64,000 bases of DNA, from IMG/VR virus record IMGVR_UViG_3300023174_005338, positions 1-64,000 of that record. One strand, written 5' to 3'. The translations under genes and the position numbers were made by a program. A model generated the notes under the pieces. The model was not told where the DNA came from, searched no databases, and worked only from the letters and a program-made list of their open reading frames with translations. Every line of letters starts with the position of its first letter. Position 1 is the first letter of the stretch. Shown one piece after another: positions 47,341 through 60,810 of this stretch.

Positions 47341-48009
47341 ATGAATACCTATGCAAGTGTGAGTGATATCAACAACCGAATGATTTCGGTCTACAACAAC
47401 ATGTTCTTGGCCGTGGTCAACAGCATGTTGGTCAGTTTATTGGTGGCTTCAAGTCCGGGACTCATGGCATTCCTGTTCACTGGTATCATGAAGTGGGTGG
47501 TGATTTTTGCACCACTGGTGATGATCTTGGCCATGACCTGGATCATGGAAAAAGCCACCTACGGCGAAGCACGAGGCATGCTACATATCTTCGCGGCTTT
47601 GATGGGACTCAGCATGAGCACCATATTCATCACGTTTACTACCACCAGTATAGTCACTGCTTTCATGGGCGCAGCCATTTTGTTTGGTACCATGAGCTTG
47701 TGGGGATACTTTACCAAGAAAAGCCTGGAAGGTTGGGGCAGTTTCTTGATGGTGGGTGTGATTGCAGTGGTGATCGCCAGCATCGTCAATGTGTTCTTGG
47801 GTAATTCGACCCTGGCCATGGTTGTATCGGCAGTGGCCATCATTGTGTTCTTGGGTCTCACTGCCTATGACACACAACGCATACGTCAAGAGGTCAGCAT
47901 TCTTGAACCTGATTCAAAGGCCGAGATCCTGGGTGCCTTGAGCCTGTACATGAACTTCATCAACATTTTTGTCAGCCTGTTGCAACTGTTTGGCAATCGT
48001 GATGATTAA
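47341..48009 (+). CDS. BAX inhibitor-1/YccA family membrane protein
   Basis: Seven TM segments; GLTAYDTQRI; ALSLYMNFINIF. Confidence 0.92.
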   Translation: MNTYASVSDINNRMISVYNNMFLAVVNSMLVSLLVASSPGLMAFLFTGIMKWVVIFAPLVMILAMTWIMEKATYGEARGMLHIFAALMGLSMSTIFITFTTTSIVTAFMGAAILFGTMSLWGYFTKKSLEGWGSFLMVGVIAVVIASIVNVFLGNSTLAMVVSAVAIIVFLGLTAYDTQRIRQEVSILEPDSKAEILGALSLYMNFINIFVSLLQLFGNRDD

Positions 48010-48120
48010 AAGATTCCGGATCTGGTTGGCTAGAAAAATATTAGGCAACTATTGCTCTTGTTATAAAATGGGATATCATGTATTATGTGATTATACCAAA
48101 CATCAAATAGGCAAGAAATC

Positions 48121-48351
48121 GTGAACCCTATTAATCTACTAACCTCGGCCATTGATAGCCTCTGGTGGTGGACCTATGGTATTATTGCCGGTTGGGGGCT
48201 GACTTTCACTCTGGTTGTAACGGCCTTGATCATCTTGTTGATCAGGACCATTAATCTACAACGCAGAGTGGATAGATTAGAAAATCGTATTATAACCAAC
48301 GAACGAGAGTTCAACTTATTTTCCAAAACATGGCCAGGCAAGAAGCAGTAG
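48121..48351 (+). CDS. Small membrane protein
   Basis: TM helix plus coiled coil. Confidence 0.5.
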   Translation: MNPINLLTSAIDSLWWWTYGIIAGWGLTFTLVVTALIILLIRTINLQRRVDRLENRIITNEREFNLFSKTWPGKKQ

Positions 48352-48509
48352 ACTCTCATCAATGTTCGGTCTGTAGTTGCGACTACACCGATGACGAAGG
48401 TGGCATCCAAGGTTATTTTGGTATCCTGCCAGTGAGCTTTTGTCCCACCTGCTTCTCGTGCATGTGCGACATGGCCAGCCAGTTCATCCAACCAGAAGAC
48501 ACAGAATAA
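48330..48509 (+). CDS. Small zinc-finger protein (59 aa, not in track)
   Basis: CSVC...FCPTC. Confidence 0.6.
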   Translation: MARQEAVDSHQCSVCSCDYTDDEGGIQGYFGILPVSFCPTCFSCMCDMASQFIQPEDTE

Positions 48510-48519
48510 ATATTTGATT

Positions 48520-50118
48520 ATGTGGTTTGGCATACTCACTCTCGCAACCGCACTGATCATATCAGTCAGTGCCGCTTATTACAGCATACTTGGTCTCACA
48601 GCCATATTTGCCGCGGCCTTCTGGCCCATAGTGATCTTGGGTAGCAGCCTGGAAGTGGGCAAGATAGTAAGCACCCTGTGGTTGCACAAGTATTGGCACA
48701 GGGCAGAAATGCAGTACAAGATATATCTCAGTGCGGCCGTGGCCATACTCATGGTCTTGACCAGCATGGGTGTGTTTGGCTTCTTGAGCAAGGCACACTT
48801 GGATCAAGTCGTGCCGTCGGGCGACATACAGGCCCAGGTGCAGATCTATGATGACAAGATCAAGACACAGCGTGACAACATAGAAGCCGCCAGAAAGGCT
48901 CTGCGCCAGATGGACGAAGCCGTGGATCAGACCATGAGTCGTAGCAGTAGCGAACAAGGAGCAGACAAAGCTGCCAACCTGCGCCGCAGCCAGGCCCGTG
49001 AACGTGGCAATCTACAGAACGACATTTCACGAGCACAGAGTGAGATCACCAAACTACAAGAACAACGAGCACCCATAGCCAGCCAGGCTCGCCAGATTGA
49101 AGCCGAAGTGGGTCCTATCAAATACATTGCCGCACTCATATATGGTGACAATCCTGATGCCAATCTGTTAGAAAAAGCAGTTCGCTGGATGATCATACTG
49201 ATTGTCATAGTGTTTGATCCACTAGCCCTGACCCTGTTGCTGGCCGCTACCAAGACCTTTGAATGGGAACGTGAAAATAAACTCAAGGACACGCATGAGG
49301 ATCCAGATCCAGATGTAGGATCTTGGTTTGATCGAGCCCGCGAGCGTGCCAGATTCTGGGACCAACAACAAAAAGAAAAACCAACTCCATGGCCATTTCC
49401 CCGACAGTTTGAAGGCATACGATCAGGTCAAGGCCAATGGATGCAGACCGGTCCTGAACTTGATGTCCCCGACGAGCAAGAACCTGTCAAATCTCAACCT
49501 ACTGTAAAACAATCTGTGTTGGCCGGTCTAGACAGCATGTGGGCCCGTGCCAAAAAACTGGCACGGCGAGATTCCGAAGCCGAACATGCACCATTAGACA
49601 CATCTGCGAACAAGCCATTGCCAACCCCAGTTGCAGAAGAGGACAACGACACATCAGAAAAGTTTGCTGAACGTGCATGGAAATCTGAAAATCCCAACGA
49701 CACTCTCAAACGCCAACGAGATCTATTGGACGCTGGCCTGATCGCAGAACTACCTTGGAATGAAGACCGATTTCAGACTCAGGTTTTGGGTCAACAAAGA
49801 ATTCAAGCCGACAATGTGCCCACTGGTGCCACCGGCGAAGTGCGAGGGTTTGGTACCAGTTTTCCGGCTGATGCCAAAAAAGGTGACATGTTTCTAAGAG
49901 TGGATCGCTTGCCCAGTGGACTTTACAAGTACAACGGCACCATGTGGATCGAGGTAGACAAATCCTTGAGCGACAGCCATGCCTGGGACGATGCCTACAT
50001 TGACCACCTCATAGCCAAGATAGGATCTGGCGAATATGATCCTGACTTGCTGAGTGATGCCGAACGTGATCGTATTGAGGCCAAACTAAAAACTGATCCT
50101 TCGTCGGGCTTGGCATGA
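48520..50118 (+). CDS. Membrane-anchored coiled-coil protein
   Basis: Three N-terminal TMs, coiled coil, EVGPIKYIA, further TM, long C-tail with FP...GD.FLR.D..P motif. Confidence 0.75.
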   Translation: MWFGILTLATALIISVSAAYYSILGLTAIFAAAFWPIVILGSSLEVGKIVSTLWLHKYWHRAEMQYKIYLSAAVAILMVLTSMGVFGFLSKAHLDQVVPSGDIQAQVQIYDDKIKTQRDNIEAARKALRQMDEAVDQTMSRSSSEQGADKAANLRRSQARERGNLQNDISRAQSEITKLQEQRAPIASQARQIEAEVGPIKYIAALIYGDNPDANLLEKAVRWMIILIVIVFDPLALTLLLAATKTFEWERENKLKDTHEDPDPDVGSWFDRARERARFWDQQQKEKPTPWPFPRQFEGIRSGQGQWMQTGPELDVPDEQEPVKSQPTVKQSVLAGLDSMWARAKKLARRDSEAEHAPLDTSANKPLPTPVAEEDNDTSEKFAERAWKSENPNDTLKRQRDLLDAGLIAELPWNEDRFQTQVLGQQRIQADNVPTGATGEVRGFGTSFPADAKKGDMFLRVDRLPSGLYKYNGTMWIEVDKSLSDSHAWDDAYIDHLIAKIGSGEYDPDLLSDAERDRIEAKLKTDPSSGLA

Positions 50119-51314
50119 CAAACAAAATTGAACACTGTAGTTTTTGCGACAAACACAAGGATCTGGTTGGCAAATTGATTGTGAGTCAGGCAGTGGCCAT
50201 ATGCAACGAATGTGTGGCCTTGTGTGACAATTTGTTGAAAGACGTCAAACCCTCTACAAAATCCAAATTTAAACAGATTGGTGTGTTGGATCCCTTGGAC
50301 ATATTGATGTACCTTGATGAATACGTGATTGGACAAGATCAAGCCAAACGAGTGCTGGCAGTTGCCATTGCCAATCACTATAAGCGTATCAGCCGACCTG
50401 GCACAGATCTACAAAAGGTCAACATAATGATGCTTGGTCCCACCGGTACCGGAAAAACTTTGTTGGCTCGCACAGTGGCTCGATATTTGCAAGTGCCATT
50501 CGTGATTGCAGATGCAACTTGTTTGACCGAAGCAGGTTATGTAGGCGATGATGTAGAAAGCATGATAGCCAGATTATACACTGCTGCCAATGGAGATGTA
50601 GAAGCCTGTCAGCGTGGCATTGTGTTCCTGGATGAAATAGACAAAATTGCTAGAAAAGGCGAAAGTGCCACAGTCAGCCGAGATGTCAGTGGCGAGGGCG
50701 TGCAACAGGCTTTGCTCAAACTGATTGAAGGCACCCGTTGTAGGATTCCAGCACAAGGCTCTAGAAAAAATTCTGGCACAGAAATGATTGAAATAGACAC
50801 TGCCAATATTCTGTTTATAGCCAGTGGTGCATTTGTGGGTCTGGAGAGAATCATACAGAATCGAGTACAAGGCACTGCCATGGGATTTGGTGCACAGCTT
50901 GACCGCGCCATTGAATCAACCATGGAGAAAATTATACCCGACGATCTGGTCAGATATGGCATGATTCCAGAATTCGTGGGCAGATTTGGTAGTTGTGTGA
51001 ATTTACATGATCTTGACAAGTCTCAGTTGATCAATATATTGACACAGGTCCGGGGAAACTTTGTCAAACAGTATCAATGGCTGTTTGAAGAAGACGGAGT
51101 TGAACTCAACTTTGATGCAGAAAGTCTGGATATCATTGCCGAACGCACACTGAAAAGCCGAACTGGTGCACGTGGCCTGCATAGCGAACTTGAACGAGTG
51201 TTGTTGCCGCACATGTTTGATTTGCCACGCTATCGACGTCAAAATATACTGGCCGTCACGATCAATAAAACCCAGGTAAATACACCCATGACACTGGCAC
51301 AGGAAAATTCGTGA
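50115..51314 (+). CDS. clpX: ClpX unfoldase
   Basis: Zinc-binding [38 protein letters not shown] loop, TGARGL. Confidence 0.95.
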
Positions 51315-51532
51315 GAGAGTACAAGAGATCGGTAGTTGTCAAGGACGACAACGTGGAACGTGCTCTGCGCAAGTTCAAGAAAAAGATACAGGAATCCGGA
51401 CTCTTGGATGAACTGCGAGGTCGCGAAACCTACGAAAAACCCACCACTGAACGCAAACGCAAAAAAGGTGCGGCCCGTGCCCGCTGGCGCAAACGGCTGA
51501 GAGATCAGCAGTTGCCCAAAAAACTCTACTGA
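51311..51532 (+). CDS. rpsU: Ribosomal protein bS21
   Basis: [13 protein letters not shown]...[15 protein letters not shown]. Confidence 0.93.
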
Positions 51533-51533
51533 T

Positions 51534-51758
51534 GTGTTTGTAGAATTTGCATTGCCGCAGGACGAAAGCTACGGGTTCGTTTTAAATCTCGTTCGTCTTG
51601 ACATTGTAGATTGGGCAACTCGCTACAACATTCCTTACACACAAAAAACAATAAAATATACGCATAGACTGGCCTTTGACCAAGACCGTTTCTATACTGT
51701 GTTTGCCACGACTTGGAATAGCAAATTTGATTATCGACTCATTGACAGACGGTGGTAA
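51534..51758 (+). CDS. Hypothetical protein
   Basis: 74-aa ORF filling the gap. Confidence 0.55.
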   Translation: MFVEFALPQDESYGFVLNLVRLDIVDWATRYNIPYTQKTIKYTHRLAFDQDRFYTVFATTWNSKFDYRLIDRRW

Positions 51759-51772
51759 ATGTGTTATAAATA
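51742..51772 (+). promoter_or_regulatory. Overlapping sigma70 (TTGACA-17-TATAAA) and late (TATAAATA) promoters for hsp20
   Basis: Both motifs read directly. Confidence 0.65.
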
Positions 51773-51776
51773 TATT

Positions 51777-51837
51777 ATGTAGATGCCGATGGTCGGGTCT
51801 ACATAATGTCACTTGCTTATTAAAGGAGAAAACAATG
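51777..51837 (+). promoter_or_regulatory. ROSE-like RNA thermometer 5' leader
   Basis: Hairpin ATGTAGA..TCTACAT, then TTGCT-TATTAA-AGGAG pairing with the SD of hsp20. Confidence 0.6.
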
Positions 51838-52275
51838 ACAAAAATCACAGCTCTGGACCTCAGTCCATTTTATCGCAACTCAATTGGTGTAGATCGTTTG
51901 TTTGGTCGTATCATGGACCAGATTGATCATGCCAGCACCAACAACTATCCACCCTACAACATACTCAAGACCGGCGAAGATACCTTTGAAATACAGGTAG
52001 CAGTAGCAGGCTTTGGCCAAGGTGAGATTGATGTTGCTGTCAAAGACGGCGAACTTGTTATCACAGGTGAAAAACAACCCGAAGCCATGTTGGTAGGTAC
52101 TGAGTACCTACATCAAGGTATCAGTGCTCGTCGTTTTATACGCACATTTACCATGGCCGATTACGTAGAAGTAGTCTCAGCCGAGTGCAAAGACGGTATC
52201 CTTACAGTGTGTTTAGAACGCCGTGTGCCCGAGGCCATGAAGCCAAAGACCATTGCGATCACCTACGCAAACTAG
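51835..52275 (+). CDS. Small heat-shock protein Hsp20 (IbpA-like)
   Basis: IGVDRLF, YPPYNI, AVAGF, YLHQGIS.R.F.R.F, DGIL. Confidence 0.95.
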   Translation: MTKITALDLSPFYRNSIGVDRLFGRIMDQIDHASTNNYPPYNILKTGEDTFEIQVAVAGFGQGEIDVAVKDGELVITGEKQPEAMLVGTEYLHQGISARRFIRTFTMADYVEVVSAECKDGILTVCLERRVPEAMKPKTIAITYAN

Positions 52276-52333
52276 TATAATGTAGTAAATACAGTGGAGG
52301 GCATGGGCTCTCCACTACTAACAAGGATCCACG

Positions 52334-52642
52334 ATGTCGCAAGCTGGCACAGTCACAAAAACAAAAATCAATCACGACATGGCAGAACCACCCATGTTCA
52401 AGGTCATTTATCTCAACGACAATGCCACACCCATGGACTTTGTGATAGAAACACTGATAGACAGTTTCAACTACAATCAACAGACAGCAGTGCAGATCAC
52501 ACATGATATACATGAAGCAGGAAGTGCGGTAGTAGCTGTGCTTCCTTATGAAATAGCTGAACAAAAAGGCATAGAAGTCACAGTGCAAGCTCGCAGCAAC
52601 AACTATCCTTTACAGGTCAAACTGGAACCTGAAACAGTCTAA
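52334..52642 (+). CDS. clpS: ClpS N-degron adaptor
   Basis: PPMFKVIYLNDNATPMDFV, IHEAG, EIAEQK, YPL. Confidence 0.92.
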   Translation: MSQAGTVTKTKINHDMAEPPMFKVIYLNDNATPMDFVIETLIDSFNYNQQTAVQITHDIHEAGSAVVAVLPYEIAEQKGIEVTVQARSNNYPLQVKLEPETV

Positions 52643-53434
52643 TCAAATTTCTATCACTATTCTTTGTGGGTAATAAGCCTGTTGACACCACGTAGTGTGG
52701 CCACGTCCACGAGGATTGCTAACATATCTGATTCCGTTCAGATCTCGATCCACAGGTCTATGATAGTGCCCAAAACACCAGGTGTGTATTTTGTTTTCCG
52801 TATCTTTGCTCAGCACGCCAGAGATGTAACTATTGCCCATGCCGTTGTATCTCCAGTTGCCTATCAAGTCCGGATCATGTGACACAATCCAAGGAGCAGG
52901 CACAGTATGGCTGACTATGACCATGGCTCTTACTTCTCTGTGTGTTTGCAGTTTGCGTACACTGTTGATCATGTAAGCGGCATCATTGTAGGCCACTCCT
53001 GTTATGTTCGTGGCTGCGGCATTGTCTATTCCATGATGATCTTGTATGGCCTGCACACTGGATTCTACATCCATGCTGGGATCAAAATCATAGGTCCACC
53101 AACCATTGGTTCCTAACAGAGCCACGCCGTTGATTATGATCACATTGTCCTGCATGTAAACTACATTTTTTATGTGTTTGAGATCTGCGTCCAGATCCTT
53201 GTAACTGGCTCCCAGATCATCAAGATAATCTTTGTGTTCTTCGTTGCCGTCCACATAAAACACACCACCTGGATAACATTGACCAAGATGATCCAAAGTA
53301 TCCAACAAGCGTTCGCGGTTGCGGGCCACATCTCCGGCAACCACACAATAAGGACTGGTGGCCTGTCCGGCCCAGTCAAATGTATTCCAGGTTTCCACGT
53401 GTAGATCAGAAATTAAATCAAAGGCAAATTGCAT
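52643..53434 (-). CDS. Calcineurin-like metallophosphoesterase
   Basis: SDLH, AGDV, GNEEH (variant of GNH), SH, GHYH, NPRG. Confidence 0.85.
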   Translation of the reverse strand: MQFAFDLISDLHVETWNTFDWAGQATSPYCVVAGDVARNRERLLDTLDHLGQCYPGGVFYVDGNEEHKDYLDDLGASYKDLDADLKHIKNVVYMQDNVIIINGVALLGTNGWWTYDFDPSMDVESSVQAIQDHHGIDNAAATNITGVAYNDAAYMINSVRKLQTHREVRAMVIVSHTVPAPWIVSHDPDLIGNWRYNGMGNSYISGVLSKDTENKIHTWCFGHYHRPVDRDLNGIRYVSNPRGRGHTTWCQQAYYPQRIVIEI

Positions 53435-53460: not shown

Positions 53461-53811
53461 ATGAACATTATATTCAAAGAAAATTTACCAGCCACCGAGC
53501 AAAAATACACAGTGTTGGATCTGGATACTTTTGCCTTGCCCGACGGGTCATTGCACACTGCCTGTTGCGTGATTGAAAACATACCCATCGTTGAACTGGC
53601 AAGCACTGAAAATTTGAAAGAACTTCATGACAACTTGATCAAAAATTATGCCTTGAAAAACTGGAACTATTGTGAACAGGCCATAGAACATCTCATGGGC
53701 AAATGGGGCGGTGAGGTAGACAGTTTTTATGCTGAATTAAAAACACGCATAGGTCGGTTAAAAACACAGGATCTAGACGATAGTTGGAGCCCGGTTATAC
53801 CAAAAAGCTAA
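53461..53811 (+). CDS. Stand-alone homologue of the adenylyl cyclase C-terminal tail
   Basis: YTVLDLD...LH..LI..Y...NW...FY..L..RI...DDSW aligns by eye with the C-terminus of 58795..60810. Confidence 0.6.
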   Translation: MNIIFKENLPATEQKYTVLDLDTFALPDGSLHTACCVIENIPIVELASTENLKELHDNLIKNYALKNWNYCEQAIEHLMGKWGGEVDSFYAELKTRIGRLKTQDLDDSWSPVIPKS

Positions 53812-53859: not shown

Positions 53860-54138
53860 GTGGGTGAATTTTTCAAGCTAGTCGCAGAACTAGGATTTCC
53901 AATAGCGGCAGCAATCGCAGCCGGATACTTTGTATTTCTCACATTGAAGTTTATTCTTGCTGGTGTAACCAGCAGTGTAAAAGGCATGGCCGGCATCATC
54001 GGCGCCTTGGACAAGCGTGTGGCCACCATGAATCATGATGTTATGCGCATTGACACAAAAGTTTCGCATGCGCTGGGTCTACAACCTGACTTGGATCGCA
54101 TAGCTCGAGCTGAACAAAGTGACGCCAGGAGAGACTAA
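53860..54138 (+). CDS. YvrJ/holin-like membrane protein
   Basis: GFPIAAA.G.F TM plus coiled coil; paralog of 54761. Confidence 0.7.
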   Translation: MGEFFKLVAELGFPIAAAIAAGYFVFLTLKFILAGVTSSVKGMAGIIGALDKRVATMNHDVMRIDTKVSHALGLQPDLDRIARAEQSDARRD

Positions 54139-54279
54139 TGAACACTCAAGAGCGCTGGAACTACATTGCCAACAATGAAGAAATTATTCGTCAATACATG
54201 GCCATGCACGATGAAGAAGTCAAAACTCGTCAGCTGGTAAAGTTTTTAGACAAACAACCACCCCGACCAGAGGCACCCG

Positions 54280-54474
54280 ATGAGATACTATGATTACGAG
54301 TGGGATCTGGAACCCAATAGAATTCTACTAGATGCTGAACTCAATGTAGATGCATTGGGCTGGAAAGCCGGCGATTATTTTAAAGTTGCCAATGTTAATG
54401 GTCGTGCCATGTTGGTCAAAGTAGATCCACTGGAAAAATTTTTAAGAGACGGAGTTGGCAATGAAAAGATATGA
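54280..54474 (+). CDS. Small hypothetical protein
   Basis: LGWKAGD motif (AbrB-like); flanked by further small ORFs 54138..54293 and 54461..54583. Confidence 0.55.
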   Translation: MRYYDYEWDLEPNRILLDAELNVDALGWKAGDYFKVANVNGRAMLVKVDPLEKFLRDGVGNEKI

Positions 54475-54573
54475 TCCTTATCGTTTACCAATCAAACAAA
54501 TCTGGACCGACGGGGATTTGGCCAAGTTTGCCATGATAGCATTTGTAGCTGGTATTGTTGTGGGCGTAGTAGC

Positions 54574-54759
54574 ATGCCTTTAGAAGTAACCTACGCATTC
54601 ATTGGTTTTATCCTGGGCGGATCAGCCTTGATCGTCAGCCTGTATGTTTGGCTGACCCTAGATGAAGCATTGGAAAATGGCCGGGACTGGATCAAGCTCA
54701 ATCAAGAGTTAAGACAAAAAATTGAAAGCATGGAACGATCAACACCAGGAAAGAGATAA
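54574..54759 (+). CDS. Small membrane protein
   Basis: TM plus coiled coil. Confidence 0.5.
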   Translation: MPLEVTYAFIGFILGGSALIVSLYVWLTLDEALENGRDWIKLNQELRQKIESMERSTPGKR

Positions 54760-54760
54760 C

Positions 54761-55039
54761 ATGGATATTGTAACCTTAATCAACAAATACGGATTTCCCA
54801 TAGTGGCCGCTGGCGGCATGGGCTACTTGATTTTCTACGTGTGGAAATGGGCTACCACTGAAATCAAACCTGTGCTCAGTGAAGCCAACACCACCTTGAT
54901 TGCCCTGATAGATCGTATCCGCATGCTGGACAACGACCTGATCCGTCTCAATCAAAAGGTCAATGTGACCCTGCACCTGCGTGGCCGTAGCATCGAGCAT
55001 GAACGCCTGGCTCAAGACGAAATCATCAACAAGTCGTAA
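54761..55039 (+). CDS. YvrJ/holin-like membrane protein
   Basis: YGFPIVAAGGMGY; LIDRIRMLDNDLIR. Confidence 0.7.
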   Translation: MDIVTLINKYGFPIVAAGGMGYLIFYVWKWATTEIKPVLSEANTTLIALIDRIRMLDNDLIRLNQKVNVTLHLRGRSIEHERLAQDEIINKS

Positions 55040-55090: not shown

Positions 55091-55531
55091 ATGAAAAAAA
55101 TAATAATAAGTGTTCTGGCCAGCGTCGCTACATCCACGGTCAGCGCACAACTGGTACATCAGTTTAACTCGCCATCCTTTTCAGGATCGGGCTACAGCAG
55201 CCATGTCTTGACCATCGAGCAACTGGAAGCCACACGCCGTAAAGCCATAGCTGATGCACAAAAAGCCGCACAGGAAAAGGCCGAACGCGATGCCAAAAAT
55301 ACCAACTTGGCCAAGTTCTTGGTCAACGTGGAAAGTCGTATCTACGCACAACTTTCAAAACAGTTGGCAGATGCCATGTTTGCCGAAGGCGGTGCCAACT
55401 CTGGCAGTTTTGATTTCCAAGGCACCAACATCAGTTATGTGAAAACTGGCACAGATGTGACCTTGACCATCATTGAGGCCAACGGAAACAGGACCGAAAT
55501 CACTGTGCCCTTGTCGAGTTTTAGTTTCTGA
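55091..55531 (+). CDS. csgF: Curli assembly CsgF-like protein
   Basis: Signal peptide, LVHQFNSPSFSG (cf. F..PSFGG), RI..QLS, G..TEI.VP; directly upstream of csgG. Confidence 0.8.
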   Translation: MKKIIISVLASVATSTVSAQLVHQFNSPSFSGSGYSSHVLTIEQLEATRRKAIADAQKAAQEKAERDAKNTNLAKFLVNVESRIYAQLSKQLADAMFAEGGANSGSFDFQGTNISYVKTGTDVTLTIIEANGNRTEITVPLSSFSF

Positions 55532-56592
55532 TGCGTAGACTACTCCTAATCCTTCTTGTTGCTGTGTTGCCTGGCTGTGCTTACATACACATGGAAGTGG
55601 CACAGGAAGAGCCTGTGAAAGTCACGCCCAAACAAAATCTCATGGATCAGTTGCCGGTGTTGGATGGACCGCCCATGACCGTGGCTGTGTACGGATTCAG
55701 AGATCTCACTGGACAGAACAAACCCAATGACAGACTGGCCTTGTTCTCAAAGGCTGTGACACAAGGTGCTGAAGTGTTCTTGATCAAGAGCCTGCAAGAT
55801 TCCAAGAACTGGTTCCGTGTGGTAGAACGTGTGGGCCTGGACAACTTGATCAAAGAACGACAGCTGATCCGCAATCAGCGTGAAGTGTATGAAGGCAAGG
55901 AAGCCAAACCACTCAAGCCTTTGACTGTGGCTGGTATCTTGTTGGAAGGTGGTATTATTGGCTATGATTCAAACATCAGGTCAGGCGGTAATGGTGCCAG
56001 ATTCCTGGGCATAGGTGGTAGCCAGCAGTATCGTGTGGACGAAGTTACTGTAAGTCTTAGATTGATCTCAATCAGTTCAGGTGAGGTCCTGATGACCAAT
56101 GCTGTGACCAAGACCATATACTCAACAGCACACAATGTGGGCGTGTTGAGATTTGTGGATGCTGGAACCAAAGCCCTGGAGTTGGAGAATGGCCAAGCTC
56201 TGAACGAGCCCACTACCTATGCTGTGCGTGTGGCCATTGAACAGGCAGTGTATGAACTGATCACAGAAGGCCAGAAAAAAGGCCTATGGAGTTACAAGCG
56301 TGCTGAGGAGAAACAAAATGATGTCAAGCCTGCTGCAACAAATGCGCCGCCTGCAACAACAAGCGGCACAGAGACAAAAACAGAAACCGCAAAAACCGCC
56401 GCAGTCACAGTAATGCGGCTGCGCGAAGCATCATACATTTATCGCGATCCAGATGAACGCAGTCAACGCACCTGGATGCTGAAGGAAAACACAGATTTGA
56501 CTGTGACACCAGGCCAGAACGGCTGGGTTGCAGTGCAAGACTCAGCCGGTCGTCGGGGCTGGGTCAAAAGCGACAGGTTAATTCAGCCATGA
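55531..56592 (+). CDS. csgG: Curli secretion pore CsgG with C-terminal SH3b-like domain
   Basis: Lipobox LPGC; VAVYGFRDLTGQ.K, AVTQG, WFRVVER.GL.NL..ERQLIR, EGGIIGYD; tail GWV.V....GRRGWV. Confidence 0.92.
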   Translation: MRRLLLILLVAVLPGCAYIHMEVAQEEPVKVTPKQNLMDQLPVLDGPPMTVAVYGFRDLTGQNKPNDRLALFSKAVTQGAEVFLIKSLQDSKNWFRVVERVGLDNLIKERQLIRNQREVYEGKEAKPLKPLTVAGILLEGGIIGYDSNIRSGGNGARFLGIGGSQQYRVDEVTVSLRLISISSGEVLMTNAVTKTIYSTAHNVGVLRFVDAGTKALELENGQALNEPTTYAVRVAIEQAVYELITEGQKKGLWSYKRAEEKQNDVKPAATNAPPATTSGTETKTETAKTAAVTVMRLREASYIYRDPDERSQRTWMLKENTDLTVTPGQNGWVAVQDSAGRRGWVKSDRLIQP

Positions 56593-56698
56593 ATGCCTGT
56601 AAATATGTAAATGCGGCAATCGCATATTATAATAATAAGGTCGCAAAGACCAAGGAGCTGGTTGGAGAATAATAAAAACAAATCCAACCTGAAACAAG

Positions 56699-57325
56699 AT
56701 GGAAAAGAGAACGACAGGCATTGGCGGATTGTCGAGAAAATTATCCGCAATTCTGATGACAGCTGCGATGTGGTCATTGGGTGCTCAGGCTAACGAAGTT
56801 TATATTGAACAGGTAGGTAGCGGTTCGACCATAAACATCACGCAACAGGGCACAGACAATCGTATCGGTGACAGCACCACTCCGGCCTACATAGGATCGG
56901 GATCAAACACAGTGACCATAGATCAGATTGGTTCGACCAACACTCTGGACATGGTGGTCAACGGTGCCGGCACAGATGTGATAGTTACAACCACCGGTGA
57001 CAACAACACTCAAACTATCAACTGTGGAACCACAACATCAGCTGGCTGTAGCGGCAGTTATATCAAACAACAAGTCACTGGAGATTCGAACACTGTGACT
57101 CAGAATCTGGGGTCGGGTGCCAATCATACCAGTGAAATCAATGTGACCGGTGATAGTAACACAGTGACTCACACCAGCACAGCCACAGGTACCACTTCGG
57201 CCAATATTACTGTGACGGGCAATACCAACACAGTGGGCGTTACTCAATCAGGAATGTTGAACAAGAGTGTCACAGTTACCAGCACTGGCAATAGCAATAA
57301 CATTAGCATTACTCAGTCTGACTAG
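56699..57325 (+). CDS. Curlin-like repeat protein (CsgA/CsgB-like)
   Basis: Signal peptide ending AQA; repeated I.Q.G..N and TG.SN.V beta-arc units. Confidence 0.75.
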   Translation: MEKRTTGIGGLSRKLSAILMTAAMWSLGAQANEVYIEQVGSGSTINITQQGTDNRIGDSTTPAYIGSGSNTVTIDQIGSTNTLDMVVNGAGTDVIVTTTGDNNTQTINCGTTTSAGCSGSYIKQQVTGDSNTVTQNLGSGANHTSEINVTGDSNTVTHTSTATGTTSANITVTGNTNTVGVTQSGMLNKSVTVTSTGNSNNISITQSD

Positions 57326-58346
57326 TTGGGCCTCAGTGGGTCGCGTGGTTGAACAGACCGGCCCCACTGAAATAGTGCGCAACAAAAAGAGTCTGAGCAG
57401 TAGTGTGAATACTCCTGTGGAGATGCTGGACACCATTGTCACAGCTCGAGCCAAGGCCAAGCTGGAGTTTGTGGACAAGACCACGGTCAACATCACTGAA
57501 CAAAGCAAGATACTCATAGACGATTTCGTGTATGATCCCAAAGCCGGATCAGGCAAGCTGGCCATGAAGATGGTACAAGGCACTGCCAGATATGCGTCAG
57601 GTCAGATAGCCAAGAACTCACCACAGAATGTAAACATAACCACACCCACTGCTGCTGTGGCCGTGCGTGGCACAGACTTTTCCATGACCGTGGATGAACT
57701 GGGTCGTAGCCTTATCATGTTGTTGCCCAGTTGCGATGCTAAAAGTTGTGTGACTGGATCAATCAGTGTCAGCAACGATGCTGGTCTAGTCATTTTAGAT
57801 GTGGCCTATCAAGTCACGGTGGTGGCCAGCTTGTCAGCACCGCCCACAGCACCCACGGTGATACAGATTGATGCCAACAACATCAACAACATGTTGATCG
57901 TGGCACCCCCACCAGCAGTGCGTGAAGCCCTACAACATATACAACAAACAGCCTTGGACATTAATTTTTTAAACAAGGATCTGCTGAAGTTTGATGAACT
58001 GGATGTGAACTATCTTGAAAAGTTCAAAAGATTGGATGTGAACTTTTTGGATTTGGATTTCTTGGTCAATTTGTTGGATCTCAGCAACAAGCAGTTGAGT
58101 GCCAGCCTAGATGCCATGAGTCGTGAAGCCAGCCTGTTACCGGCCTATGATCCTAACTCTGGACTAAGGTATTTTTTCAACGAAGATGAAAGCAAGGTCA
58201 CTGTGAGACTAAACACAGGGCACATGGCCGAAGTCACTGTGGGCGTAGAACATGATGCTGTGGTGACTATAAATCAAGCAGGATGGGCAGTTACACAACA
58301 GATCAACCGTGGCGGAACCAGTATAATTAATATTATACAACGATAA
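57267..58346 (+). CDS. FecR-domain periplasmic protein
   Basis: Signal peptide; D.I.T, F.D.T.V.I.EQS...ID.FVYDP, G..RY.SG, TPTA...VRGTDF. Confidence 0.88.
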   Translation: MSQLPALAIAITLALLSLTSWASVGRVVEQTGPTEIVRNKKSLSSSVNTPVEMLDTIVTARAKAKLEFVDKTTVNITEQSKILIDDFVYDPKAGSGKLAMKMVQGTARYASGQIAKNSPQNVNITTPTAAVAVRGTDFSMTVDELGRSLIMLLPSCDAKSCVTGSISVSNDAGLVILDVAYQVTVVASLSAPPTAPTVIQIDANNINNMLIVAPPPAVREALQHIQQTALDINFLNKDLLKFDELDVNYLEKFKRLDVNFLDLDFLVNLLDLSNKQLSASLDAMSREASLLPAYDPNSGLRYFFNEDESKVTVRLNTGHMAEVTVGVEHDAVVTINQAGWAVTQQINRGGTSIINIIQR

Positions 58347-58356
58347 GGAGATAATA

Positions 58357-58521
58357 ATGGAAGGAACCACAATCAAGACTCTGGCTGAATATATTGCCAA
58401 ATTGAATCGTGACAATGCTGAATTCTTGAAAGAATACGAAAACGATCAATTTGATACCAATGGCGTTGAACAAGATCACATAGAAACATTCTGGCCACCC
58501 AATGAGCACCCCCGCACCTAA
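58357..58521 (+). CDS. Small acidic protein (54 aa, not in track)
   Basis: AAGGAG SD; MEGTTIKTLAEYIAKL... Confidence 0.55.
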   Translation: MEGTTIKTLAEYIAKLNRDNAEFLKEYENDQFDTNGVEQDHIETFWPPNEHPRT

Positions 58522-58666
58522 TTCTCCAGCACCTTGGTGTTGTTGGCCTGGTTGCACTCGACCTGCACAGATCTACGAAAATAGAAATATCAAAGGAGTA
58601 ACATCATATCTTAAAACCTGTGGCAAACACTGGTTACCAGGTGTTCACTCCAGAGCTAATCCATAA
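58502..58666 (+). CDS. Small Cys/His (zinc-binding-like) protein (54 aa, not in track)
   Basis: CCWPGC...TCGKH. Confidence 0.45.
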   Translation: MSTPAPNSPAPWCCWPGCTRPAQIYENRNIKGVTSYLKTCGKHWLPGVHSRANP

Positions 58667-58704
58667 TGTGCGTGTTGATCTTATCCAAGCTCAACCAGTA
58701 AATA

Positions 58705-58776
58705 CTGTGTCGATATAAAAACTATAAGGAATCGACCCAGCTACATATTCAAAAGCCCCCGCGAGGGGCTTTTTTT
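58705..58776 (+). ncRNA. Candidate small RNA
   Basis: TAAATA at 58699-58704, GTCGAT/ATCGAC hairpin with A-rich AAGGA loop, then terminator; no ORF. Confidence 0.45.
58751..58776 (+). terminator. Rho-independent terminator
   Basis: AAAAGCCCC-CGCGA-GGGGCTTTT plus T-run. Confidence 0.85.
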
Positions 58777-58794
58777 ATCTAAGTTAAATATAAC

Positions 58795-60810
58795 ATGCTG
58801 AAAAAAATCCTAACTAGCCCCTGGACTGCTCTAATAACATTGGCAGTTATAGTAGCAATACGCATAGCGGATCCTGCATTTGTAGAAAGTGTTCGCTTGC
58901 GTTATTTTGATACCTTGGTGACCAGCAAGCCCGCAGAAGTCACAGGTGTTCATGTTGTAAATATTGATGAAAAGGCTTTAGAACGATATGGTCAGTTTCC
59001 CTTCGCCAGAAATGTATATGCTGGCATCATCCAAGATCTTTATCGCCGCAACGCTGGTCTTGTTGTTTTTAATATTCTTACTCCTGATCGCGATCGCATG
59101 GGTCGCGATGCGGCGTATGTGGCGGCGTTGCAAAAACATGCTACGGTTCTTCCAAGCATAGGCAGCACAGCGACTCGTAACCAACCTAGGAATCCCGGAA
59201 GTGCGGTGATCGGTCCCCTGGATACTAACAATTTTGTGACCTATCCTGGAATCATTGCCAACATACCTGCTGTGGAACGTGCGGCCATAGGCGTAGGTAT
59301 CACTAACACCTTGCCCGAGATAGATGGTGTGGTACGTAGAATGCCCATGGTAGTGGCTGTTGATGGTAAGTTATATCCCAGTCTGGCCATGGAAGTCATG
59401 CGTGTGGCCGCAGGTGACTCGACTTTCCAAGTCAAAGTAAATGAACAGGGCGTGGAAAAAATGCGTATTCCACAGTTTGGCCCAGTGAGTACAGATAGCC
59501 TCAGCAGGATCTGGATTGACTGGAGCCTGACTCCAGAACGTCACGGCTTAACCGACTTGCCCCAGGACTTTGATGGCGAGATAGTTATTGTGGGAGTCAG
59601 TGCCGCAGGCCTGTCCAATCCTGTGGCCACCAGCCTGGGTGAGATGTTGCCACAAGACTTGCAAGCCGCTGTGATATCAACAGTGATAGCCAACAAGATC
59701 AGACCAGCTATTACTCGTCCTGACTGGGCAGATGGTGCAGAGATAATCACCTTGGTCGTGCTTGCGGTGACATTGATATTTTTAGGGAGATGGACCTATG
59801 TTGGTATTGCTGGCAGTGTTGTTGTCATTGGTATTTGTGTTTGGGTTCCTGGTGCTTTGTACTCGAGCCATGCTTGGCTCACTGACGTCACTTTGGTTGT
59901 TGGGGGTCTTGTTGCTGTGCTTCTGCATGCTTATGGAGTACGGTTTGTATCAGAGTATCTTGCTAAACAACAAATAAAGAAACAGTTTGGCACCTACTTG
60001 AGTCCGGCCATGGTCGAGAAACTTCAGAAGAATCCAGAACTGCTGAAGTTGGGCGGTGAAAGCAGAGAGTTGAGTATCATGTTCACTGATGTGCGTGGCT
60101 TTACTACCATCAGCGAACACTACGGTGCCGACGTTCAAGGACTGACCAAGATCATGAACAGATATATGACAGCCATGACCGCCAAAATCATAGAGAACGA
60201 AGGTACCTTGGACAAGTACATAGGTGATGCACAGATGGCATTTTGGAATGCACCCTTGGATGACGCTGATCATGCTGTCAATGCTGTGCGTACTGCTTTA
60301 CAAATGATGGAGAGTTTGGATGAGTTCAATCGTGAAATCAGTGCAGAAGGCATTCCGCCTTTTGGCATGGGCCTTGGCATCAATACTGGTACCGTGGTCG
60401 TTGGTAATATGGGCAGCGATCAGCGTTTTGATTACACCTGCCTTGGTGACAGCGTTAATCTGGCGAGCCGACTCGAAGGCCAGTCAAAACCTTATGGCGT
60501 TCGCATCATACTGGGACCGCGTACTAGTGAGCTTGTCAGAGATTCCTACCCAGTTGCGGAACTAGACTGCATAGCAGTAAAAGGCAAGACCGAAGGCGTC
60601 CGCATATATACACTGGCAGAAGAAACACAGTTGCACAAAGATTTTATCACCTTGTATTACGCTGGCGAATGGAAACAAGCACAGGCCTTGATTCCAGGAT
60701 GCATCAAAGCCTGCCCAGAACTGGAGGCATATTATGGGGCCATGGATGAACGACTTGCGGCAGGTAAGCCAGATGACTGGATGGGAACCTATAAGGCTAC
60801 ATCTAAATGA
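58795..60810 (+). CDS. CHASE2-domain class III adenylyl cyclase
   Basis: N-terminal TM; CHASE2 (VVNIDE..L..YGQFP..R, DGVVRR.P); three TMs; FTDVRGFT, DKYIGD, GINTG, DYT.LGD.VNLASRLE. Confidence 0.93.
   Translation: MLKKILTSPWTALITLAVIVAIRIADPAFVESVRLRYFDTLVTSKPAEVTGVHVVNIDEKALERYGQFPFARNVYAGIIQDLYRRNAGLVVFNILTPDRDRMGRDAAYVAALQKHATVLPSIGSTATRNQPRNPGSAVIGPLDTNNFVTYPGIIANIPAVERAAIGVGITNTLPEIDGVVRRMPMVVAVDGKLYPSLAMEVMRVAAGDSTFQVKVNEQGVEKMRIPQFGPVSTDSLSRIWIDWSLTPERHGLTDLPQDFDGEIVIVGVSAAGLSNPVATSLGEMLPQDLQAAVISTVIANKIRPAITRPDWADGAEIITLVVLAVTLIFLGRWTYVGIAGSVVVIGICVWVPGALYSSHAWLTDVTLVVGGLVAVLLHAYGVRFVSEYLAKQQIKKQFGTYLSPAMVEKLQKNPELLKLGGESRELSIMFTDVRGFTTISEHYGADVQGLTKIMNRYMTAMTAKIIENEGTLDKYIGDAQMAFWNAPLDDADHAVNAVRTALQMMESLDEFNREISAEGIPPFGMGLGINTGTVVVGNMGSDQRFDYTCLGDSVNLASRLEGQSKPYGVRIILGPRTSELVRDSYPVAELDCIAVKGKTEGVRIYTLAEETQLHKDFITLYYAGEWKQAQALIPGCIKACPELEAYYGAMDERLAAGKPDDWMGTYKATSK

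What the first reader, a model, noticed from the sequence alone, without database searches (positions are those of the whole stretch)
53461..53811. Free-standing copy of the cyclase C-terminal tail, divergent from the phosphoesterase
The 116-aa ORF (KYTVLDLDTF...LHDNLIKNYALKNW...VDSFYAELKTRI...DDSWSPV) aligns by eye with the last ~90 aa of the cyclase (YPVAELDCI...LHKDFITLYYAGEW...LEAYYGAMDERL...PDDWMG) but has no catalytic core. It could be a dominant-negative or adaptor subunit regulating cyclase dimers, or a link to the phosphoesterase.
Basis: partly seen in the sequence, partly recalled or inferred. Interest (0 to 1): 0.7.

Follow-up and report, generated by a model that had tools for sequence, protein, structure and literature searches.

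The report
Stand-alone cyclase C-terminal module in phage
A 116-residue gene of a 337-kb freshwater jumbo phage is a true but ancient, non-catalytic copy of the last ~110 residues of CHASE2-type adenylate cyclases; it is kept under selection in nearly all relatives, most of which have no cyclase, so it is a re-used protein module and not a dedicated regulator of the neighbouring cyclase.

Summary
The ORF is real (53461..53811, +, ATG, RBS-like AGAGGA 8 nt upstream). Its likeness to the cyclase tail (58795..60810) is weak pairwise (24% id, E=0.006) but decisive with profiles. Against the phage cyclases, hhalign gives 97.9% probability, E=5e-13. Against an independent bacteria-only profile it gives 99.5%, E=1.6e-22 over 115 columns. 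In the phage's own 337 kb the ORF profile hits only itself and the cyclase C-terminus (E=2e-6). Structure searches also return cyclase C-termini.

The ORF matches strands beta6-beta8 of the catalytic domain plus a TPR-like helical tail that many bacterial CHASE2 cyclases share. It has none of the catalytic residues. It is a selected gene (dN/dS about 0.16; 299 clusters at 50% identity).

Only 1 of 5 near-complete relatives carrying the ORF has a cyclase, and a full-length cyclase lies in 7 of 44 loci. The cyclase belongs to an optional curli (T8SS)-FecR-cyclase cassette already described in pelagiphages. The phosphoesterase is also dispensable (37 of 44 loci). The constant neighbours are Hsp20 and ClpS (44 of 44).

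Best reading: an exapted, non-catalytic binding module whose partner is unknown.

The parts
53461..53811 (+). SMALL: 116-aa free-standing homologue of the C-terminal module (beta6-alpha5-beta7-beta8 plus TPR-like helical tail) of CHASE2-type class III cyclases; coordinates include the stop codon
53447..53452 (+). Shine-Dalgarno-like AGAGGA, 8 nt upstream of the ATG, inside the 26-nt spacer between the divergent start codons
   Evidence: read directly from the sequence
60502..60810 (+). C-terminal module of the cyclase that is homologous to SMALL (P0002 residues ~570-671): last strands of the catalytic domain plus the tail that ends ...DDWMGTYKATSK
   Evidence: profile hit 60502-60783, E=2e-6
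58795..60810 (+). CHASE2 + class III cyclase (671 aa) with the catalytic residues intact; last gene of the optional T8SS-FecR-cyclase cassette (context)
55091..58346 (+). CsgF, CsgG (with a C-terminal SH3 domain), curlin-repeat protein and FecR-like protein: the rest of the viral T8SS module (context, optional among relatives)
52643..53434 (-). Calcineurin-like metallophosphoesterase (263 aa, phrog_1649), divergent neighbour; present in 37 of 44 loci (context)
51829..52642 (+). Hsp20 and ClpS genes, the invariant upstream neighbours of SMALL on the same strand (44 of 44 loci; also in the most divergent relatives)

Best explanation
SMALL is an old, exapted copy of the 3' end of a CHASE2-type class III adenylate cyclase gene. 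It encodes only the C-terminal structural module: strands beta6-beta8 of the catalytic domain and the TPR-like helical tail that many bacterial CHASE2 cyclases carry beyond Pfam PF00211.

It lacks every catalytic element (both metal-binding Asp, the substrate Lys, the Asn/Arg pair and the KGK loop), so it cannot make cyclic nucleotides.

It is a selected, near-core gene of a lineage of ~300-350-kb freshwater jumbo phages. It always lies just downstream of Hsp20-ClpS and does not depend on the optional curli/FecR/cyclase cassette or on the phosphoesterase.

Shown: homology, loss of catalysis, purifying selection, distribution and synteny.

Inferred: it acts as a non-catalytic protein-binding module that keeps the surface of the cyclase tail. 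D22, H56, Y63, W68, Y90, R96 and W109 match residues conserved in the cyclases. The strongly conserved but poorly modelled N-terminal strand MNIIF could serve for strand pairing. The module would therefore engage whatever the cyclase tail normally engages, either a host protein or a host cyclase, and not the phage's own cyclase. The partner is unknown.

Rough odds: identity and non-catalytic status above 0.9; 'binding module that works independently of the phage cyclase' about 0.6; 'its target lies in host cyclic-nucleotide signalling' about 0.25.
For: Homology: by sequence and profile; by fold and features.

The tail is ancestral in bacteria: Alphaproteobacteria/Micavibrio, Desulfovibrionaceae, Bdellovibrionales, Acidobacteriota and Verrucomicrobia cyclases end in ...PP.DWDGV....K.

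No catalysis: the cyclase alignment has FTD, DKYIGD, VNLASR and VKGK conserved. SMALL begins after these and has PDG in place of KGK. None of 61 family members matches PF00211.

Selected gene: dN/dS median 0.157 over 45 pairs; 443 clusters at 90% identity and 299 at 50%, nearly all 100-135 aa.

Independence from the cyclase: PF00211 present in 5 of 20 whole records and in 1 of 5 that are at least 90% complete; a cyclase hit in 9 of 44 loci, of which 7 are full-length genes and 2 are the L007/L008 deletion remnant.

Near-core status and synteny: Hsp20 and ClpS in 44 of 44 loci; SMALL in 69 of 73 ClpS-anchored loci; the same order in relatives of ~30-35% identity.

Fold: beta-hairpin plus three helices, helices at pLDDT ~90; the helical part resembles TPR-like hairpins (weak).
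Against: No direct evidence of any binding partner. The one complex prediction (cyclase dimer plus SMALL) gave no answer. The TPR-like assignment is within noise for helical folds, and no Pfam TPR model matches. Residues shared with the cyclases may be purely structural, for example docking the tail onto the hairpin, and need not mark a shared binding surface. Constant synteny with Hsp20/ClpS could reflect descent in one phage lineage and not function, or it could point to a proteostasis role unrelated to cyclases. No expression data exist: the phage was found only in DNA metagenomes.
Confidence: 0.6

Rival explanations
1. One reading: SMALL is a dedicated dominant-negative or adaptor subunit that regulates dimers of the phage's own CHASE2 cyclase.
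For: True homology to the cyclase C-terminus. Where the cyclase is present it lies 5-9 kb downstream of SMALL, mostly on the same strand.
Against: Most relatives with SMALL have no cyclase: 4 of 5 near-complete genomes, including a 100%-complete DTR record, and only 7 of 44 loci carry a full cyclase. SMALL is less like the co-resident cyclase clade than like other cyclase lineages. It lacks the parts that form the class III dimer interface (inference from known structures). The cyclase belongs to a mobile T8SS module.
Confidence: 0.08
2. SMALL is a partner or regulatory subunit of the divergently transcribed metallophosphoesterase, for example of a cyclic-nucleotide phosphodiesterase.
For: The start codons are 26 nt apart. 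The phosphoesterase is present in 37 of 44 SMALL loci and in all 73 close ClpS-anchored loci. Class III cNMP phosphodiesterases are calcineurin-like metallophosphoesterases (general knowledge).
Against: SMALL persists without the phosphoesterase in 7 of 44 loci, where it directly follows ClpS. In a divergent relative the slot holds an unrelated 307-aa gene. Four loci keep the phosphoesterase but have replaced SMALL. The phosphoesterase matches only generic families. No binding test was run.
Confidence: 0.1
3. SMALL works in the phage's proteostasis cluster (ClpX, Hsp20, ClpS), for example as an adaptor, a substrate or a modulator of ClpS, with its cyclase ancestry irrelevant to its present role.
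For: Hsp20 and ClpS are upstream on the same strand in 44 of 44 loci. SMALL abuts ClpS whenever the phosphoesterase is absent. The order holds in relatives of ~30-35% identity.
Against: All loci belong to one phage lineage, so the synteny may be inherited and not functional. Accessory genes (phosphoesterase, homing-endonuclease-like ORFs, the 307-aa gene) insert freely between ClpS and SMALL. There is no sequence or fold link to known Clp adaptors.
Confidence: 0.17
4. SMALL is a decaying remnant of a deleted cyclase gene, or the likeness is chance.
For: Deletion remnants do arise: L007 and L008 carry a 122-aa in-frame fusion of cyclase residues 1-~64 to the tail.
Against: dN/dS is about 0.16, length and start are conserved, and there are 299 clusters at 50% identity. 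The profile E-value is 1.6e-22 against independent bacterial data, and only two hits occur in the 337-kb genome.
Confidence: 0.02

Closest known systems
C-terminal region of bacterial and viral CHASE2-type class III adenylate cyclases (PF05226 + PF00211 plus an undescribed tail)
   Same: Homologous over ~110 residues: beta6 (IIFG ~ IILG), beta7 (YTVLELDTF ~ F..ELD..VKGK region), beta8, then H..L..Y...W..A/C..(F/Y)Y....R and a terminal ..DW..V..K. The same secondary-structure order is predicted in both.
   Different: Free-standing. It has no CHASE2 sensor, no membrane helices, no catalytic core and no KGK loop, and it has an 8-12-residue longer hairpin region. It also has a different distribution: near-core in the phage lineage, whereas the cyclase is optional.
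Viral T8SS (curli) module CsgF-CsgG-CsgA/B-FecR-adenylate cyclase of pelagiphages (PMC9599517)
   Same: The window's genes at 55091-60810 have the same content and order. SMALL sits at the edge of the slot where this module is inserted.
   Different: SMALL is not part of the module. It is present in most relatives that lack the module, and that paper does not mention it in the passages read.
Single TPR-like helical hairpins used as protein-binding modules (e.g. SRP72, BamD, NrfG, Sti1 TPR2B)
   Same: Helices 48-108 superpose at Z 6.6-8.4. The Y..G/N.W..A/C pattern resembles the TPR signature (own reading).
   Different: The Z values are within the noise the tool gives for helical folds, no Pfam TPR model matches, and an N-terminal beta-hairpin is attached.
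In-frame deletion derivative of the cyclase in L007/L008 (122 aa)
   Same: A natural free-standing protein that retains the cyclase tail. It shows that deletions can generate tail-only products in these phages.
   Different: It is recent (82% identical to the cyclase N-terminus), keeps the first membrane helix, lacks the beta6-beta8 strands and is seen in only two contigs. SMALL is ancient, soluble and widespread.

Membership tests
Class III nucleotidyl cyclase catalytic domain (PF00211) | Complete catalytic fold recognised by the family model | tested here: not met
   No PF00211 match for P0001 or for any of 61 family members at E<=1. SMALL aligns only to about the last 40 residues of the domain.
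Class III nucleotidyl cyclase catalytic domain (PF00211) | Catalytic residues: two metal-binding Asp, substrate Lys, transition-state Asn/Arg, phosphate-binding KGK loop | tested here: not met
   These are conserved in the cyclase alignment. SMALL starts after the Asn/Arg helix and has PDG where the cyclases have KGK.
Class III nucleotidyl cyclase catalytic domain (PF00211) | Common descent with the domain's C-terminal strands beta6-beta8 | tested here: met
   hhalign 97.9-99.5%, E=5e-13 to 1.6e-22, with the alignment starting at beta6. Fold hits to cyclase C-termini.
CHASE2-cyclase C-terminal tail (undescribed extension beyond PF00211) | Motifs H..(M/L)L..YR...W..A, ..Y..Y..R., and a terminal ..DW.GV....K, directly after beta8 | tested here: met
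   SMALL has LH..LI..Y....W..C, DSFY.....RI and DSW.PVI.K in the same order and register. The tail-only comparison gives 96.9%, E=1.5e-10.
Viral T8SS-FecR-cyclase module | Co-occurrence with CsgF/CsgG/curlin/FecR/cyclase | tested here: not met
   The module is present next to SMALL in a minority of loci: CsgF 11, CsgG 9 and cyclase 9 of 44. PF00211 is present in 1 of 5 near-complete genomes.
Tetratricopeptide repeat (TPR) | Match to TPR sequence models, or a clear structural match of a helix-turn-helix repeat | tested here: inconclusive
   No Pfam TPR hit. VIA-align Z is 6.6-8.4 to TPR proteins, inside the noise range. A TPR cluster scored 0.81 by language-model features.
Known anti-phage defence or anti-defence proteins | Match to PADLOC models | tested here: not met
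   Only two marginal hits (AbiEi and a type I specificity subunit, E=0.0036, 14-15 bits), judged to be chance.
Functional protein-coding gene (as against a remnant) | Purifying selection, conserved length and conserved start | tested here: met
   dN/dS median 0.157 and a conserved M[NH]IIF[GK] start. 109 of the 121 closest sequences are exactly 116 aa.

The most novel reading that the evidence does not exclude
SMALL is a phage-made mimic of the C-terminal module of class III cyclases. It docks onto host cyclases or onto the partner of their tails and so rewires or blocks host cyclic-nucleotide signalling during infection, whether cAMP control of surface structures or a cyclase-based defence. 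That would be a new class of small 'enzyme-fragment decoy' proteins, and it would also reveal what the undescribed tail of bacterial CHASE2 cyclases does.
Probability: 0.15. Interest if true: 0.8.

Novelty: new variant of a known kind. Interest (0 to 1): 0.5.

Why it matters
The work defines an undescribed family of small phage proteins: 299 clusters at 50% identity, with no Pfam, PHROG or NCBIfam model. The family arose by re-use of a fragment of a signalling enzyme. It also draws attention to a conserved but uncharacterised C-terminal tail on many bacterial CHASE2 adenylate cyclases. If the free-standing module still binds what the tail binds, it gives a simple handle, a 116-residue soluble protein, for finding the tail's partner and function. 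It would also be an example of a phage using an enzyme fragment as a decoy. Finally, the work corrects an attractive but wrong inference: the cyclase next door belongs to a separate, mobile curli module.

Tried and rejected
- Complex prediction of the cyclase (residues 400-671, two copies, 55-row alignment) with SMALL gave 'no answer' (score 0.00). It is neither support nor evidence against binding.
- AlphaFold2 of cyclase 400-671 with a shallow 16-row alignment gave a poor model (pLDDT 58), so it was not used for fold searches. Only its secondary-structure order and the confident tail helices were noted.
- Foldseek against the PDB gave no match at E<=0.001.
- Sequence search of solved structures with the SMALL profile and with cyclase 560-671 found nothing credible: Dicer-2 and others at E about 0.3, and no hit at all, respectively.
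- Pfam, PHROGs and NCBIfam have no model for SMALL. The PADLOC hits are marginal and were rejected.
- tblastn of SMALL against 50,697 deposited phage genomes found no match. DNA search found only a 94-bp weak hit to Methylophilales phage Melnitz, in the gene downstream of SMALL.
- The search for related loci with the diverse alignment A2 failed because no conserved stretch was available. The closer alignment A1 was used instead.
- The sigma-70 promoter and terminator scan around the junction was uninformative.
- No RNA run holds the phage, so transcription could not be tested and read laying was not used.
- 'Recent tandem duplicate of the neighbouring cyclase 3' end' was considered and rejected.
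- 'Family contaminated by truncated cyclase gene calls' was considered and rejected.

Full report
**1. What is there**

The window is the first 64 kb of a complete, terminally repeated 337,119-bp virus record. The phage is found only in freshwater and lake DNA metagenomes. The ORF at 53461..53811 (+) encodes 116 residues from an ATG, and an AGAGGA lies 8 nt upstream.

The metallophosphoesterase (52643..53434, minus strand; phrog_1649, weak Metallophos_2) is divergent from it. The two start codons are 26 nt apart, and the phosphoesterase stop codon abuts the stop codon of ClpS.

The 'cyclase' is the 671-residue ORF at 58795..60810. It has CHASE2 at residues 15-326 and PF00211 at 424-607, leaving a 64-residue tail outside any Pfam model.

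**2. Is the likeness real?**

Pairwise it is marginal: BLASTP gives 24% identity over 89 residues, E=0.006. With shallow profiles (Neff about 2 on both sides), hhalign gave the same alignment at P=1.3e-3. None of 200 column-shuffled controls reached the real score of 24.0 (mean 12.0, sd 3.0, max 23.7).

A full-database profile search then showed that the small ORF has its own broad family. It comprises 299 clusters at 50% identity, and all of the best 150 are short, free-standing proteins. With 137 of these (Neff 5.3) the comparison became decisive:
- Against phage cyclase residues 420-671: 97.9% probability, E=4.8e-13, ORF residues 2-114 against cyclase ~570-667.
- Against the tail alone: 96.9%, E=1.5e-10.
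- Against an independent profile made only from 68 bacterial cyclase C-termini: 99.5%, E=1.6e-22 over 115 columns.

Further support:
- Run over all six frames of the phage's own 337 kb, the ORF profile hits exactly two places at E<=10. These are the ORF itself (E=5.9e-43) and cyclase 60502-60783 (E=2e-6).
- Plain tblastn of cyclase residues 565-670 hits the orthologous small ORF in six other phages at E=3-5e-4.
- None of 61 family members matches PF00211, so the family is not made of truncated cyclase gene calls.
- The AlphaFold2 model (pLDDT 76; hairpin at 15-25 and 31-42; helices at 43-64, 68-78 and 85-100) retrieves C-termini of CHASE2/PF00211 proteins. In AFDB clusters these are hit residues 368-474 of 479 (probability 0.96) and 288-386 of 388 (probability 0.98). 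In the ESM Atlas the TM-score is 0.58.
- Language-model features give the same lead.

**3. What the module is**

The aligned part starts at strand beta6 of the catalytic domain (MNIIFG against RIILG). It runs through beta7 (KYTVLELDTF against SYPVAELDCI) and beta8, and then through the helical tail.

The tail is not peculiar to the phage. CHASE2-type cyclases of Alphaproteobacteria (Micavibrio and others), Desulfovibrionaceae, Bdellovibrionales, Acidobacteriota and Verrucomicrobia carry it, ending ...PP.DWDGV....K. No curated family and no solved structure covers it.

Residues conserved in both families are D22, H56, Y63, W68, Y90, R96 and W109 in SMALL numbering. They correspond to D192, H215, Y222, W227, Y248, R254 and W263 of the cyclase fragment.

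All catalytic elements lie upstream of the point where SMALL begins, and the KGK loop is PDG in SMALL. SMALL therefore cannot be a cyclase. The helices resemble TPR-like hairpins, but only at a level the tool itself calls noise for helical folds.

**4. Is it a working gene?**

Yes. The evidence is:
- dN/dS has a median of 0.157 over 45 pairs.
- The length is almost fixed: 109 of the 121 closest sequences have 116 residues.
- The start M[NH]IIF[GK] is conserved.
- There are 443 clusters at 90% identity, on contigs of up to 348 kb.

**5. Distribution and neighbours**

Forty-four viral loci with SMALL were fetched. Gene content around SMALL was as follows:

| Neighbour | Loci of 44 |
|---|---|
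| Hsp20, upstream, same strand | 44 |
| ClpS, upstream, same strand | 44 |
| ClpX | 36 |
| Ribosomal protein S21 | 32 |
| Phosphoesterase | 37 |

Where the phosphoesterase is absent, SMALL usually follows ClpS directly. Downstream of SMALL is a variable slot. It holds the CsgF-CsgG-curlin-FecR-cyclase cassette in only a minority of loci: a full cyclase in 7, and any cyclase hit in 9.

Whole-record searches for PF00211 found a cyclase in 5 of 20 records. Among records at least 90% complete it was 1 of 5, and a 100%-complete DTR genome of 328 kb has SMALL but no cyclase.

Anchoring on ClpS instead, 69 of 73 loci with enough downstream sequence have SMALL. In the other four it is replaced by an unrelated 184-residue membrane protein, while the phosphoesterase stays.

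The most divergent SMALL relatives (~30-35% identity) still show S21-Hsp20-ClpS-[one gene]-SMALL. The intervening gene can be an unrelated 307-residue protein on the same strand.

The SMALL profile scores Micavibrio-type and some phage-like cyclase tails at 60-66 bits, but the window's own cyclase clade at only 27-48 bits. SMALL is therefore not a recent duplicate of its neighbour.

The cassette itself is the viral T8SS (curli) module with FecR and adenylate cyclase that has been described in marine pelagiphages. That paper infers an alphaproteobacterial origin and transfer as a block (PMC9599517; Pfam confirmation).

**6. How such a gene can arise**

L007 and L008 carry a 122-residue in-frame deletion product of the cyclase. 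It joins residues 1-~64 (first membrane helix and the start of CHASE2, 82% identical) directly to the tail. This is a recent, independent example of a tail-only derivative in the same genomic slot. It makes an origin of SMALL by truncation of an ancestral cyclase gene plausible, but this is inference.

**7. Mechanism**

Shown: a non-catalytic, selected, near-core small protein that is homologous to the cyclase C-terminal module and is independent of the phage cyclase and of the phosphoesterase.

Inferred: it is a protein-binding module that keeps the conserved surface of the cyclase tail. The invariant hydrophobic N-terminal strand is modelled with low confidence (pLDDT 52-63), which would fit strand pairing with a partner or with a second copy.

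Candidate targets are host proteins that recognise cyclase tails, or host class III cyclases (about 0.25). The alternative is the adjacent proteostasis set of ClpS and Hsp20 (about 0.17). A dedicated role on the phage's own cyclase (about 0.08) or on the phosphoesterase (about 0.10) is disfavoured by the distribution. The only complex prediction allowed (cyclase dimer plus SMALL) returned no answer and is not used as evidence.

**8. Comparison, novelty and verdict**

SMALL works like, and descends from, the C-terminal module of CHASE2-type class III cyclases. It fails membership of PF00211 as an enzyme: there is no model match and no catalytic residues. It is not part of the T8SS module.

I know of no description of a free-standing version of this module, and two literature searches on CHASE2 adenylate cyclases in phages and on jumbo-phage cyclase/curli genes returned none. 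I rate it a new variant of a known kind, with interest 0.5. The homology is solid and the family is large and unannotated, but the function remains inferred.

Noticed in passing
window 55091-60810: A complete viral T8SS (curli) module sits in a 337-kb freshwater jumbo phage: CsgF, CsgG, a curlin-repeat protein, a FecR-like protein and a CHASE2 adenylate cyclase. This gene set was described for marine pelagiphages of much smaller genome size (PMC9599517). Here the CsgG homologue carries an extra C-terminal bacterial SH3 domain (residues 303-350).
   Followed up: partly
L007 6895-7263 (and L008 4012-4377): A 122-aa in-frame internal-deletion derivative of the cyclase joins the N-terminal membrane helix and the start of CHASE2 directly to the C-terminal tail. 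It lies in the slot downstream of SMALL.
   Followed up: partly
window 47341-52642: A cluster of host-like housekeeping genes in the phage: a Bax1-I family membrane protein (47341-48009), ClpX (50115-51314), ribosomal protein S21 (51311-51532), Hsp20 (about 51829-52275) and ClpS (52334-52642). The gene order is conserved across relatives.
   Followed up: partly
L007 5054-5667 (minus strand): Two overlapping ORFs with GIY-YIG/NUMOD-like motifs (by eye) are inserted between the phosphoesterase and SMALL. They suggest a homing endonuclease and show that this junction is an insertion hot spot.
   Followed up: no
L139 5218-5772; L145 5144-5698 (also L146, L149): In four close relatives SMALL is replaced by an unrelated 184-aa protein with predicted membrane helices, while the phosphoesterase is retained.
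   Followed up: partly
L051, L052, L053: Cyclases 68-71% identical to the phage's lie on contigs binned as Chitinophagales/Bacteroidetes MAGs. This is either phage DNA mis-binned or a hint to the host. The tails of L052 and L053 are among the best matches to SMALL (63-66 bits); L052 has CWHGELNNYY against SMALL's GKWGGELDSFY.
   Followed up: no
window 53860-55039: A run of very small ORFs (51-92 aa), some with hydrophobic stretches (by eye), lies between SMALL and CsgF. In other phages some of them lie, inverted, on the far side of the cyclase (L022, L029, L037, L044), as if they belong to the mobile cassette.
   Followed up: no
window 56699-57325 and 57267-58346: The curlin-repeat ORF and the listed GTG start of the FecR-like ORF overlap by 59 nt, so the true FecR start is probably further downstream.
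   Followed up: no
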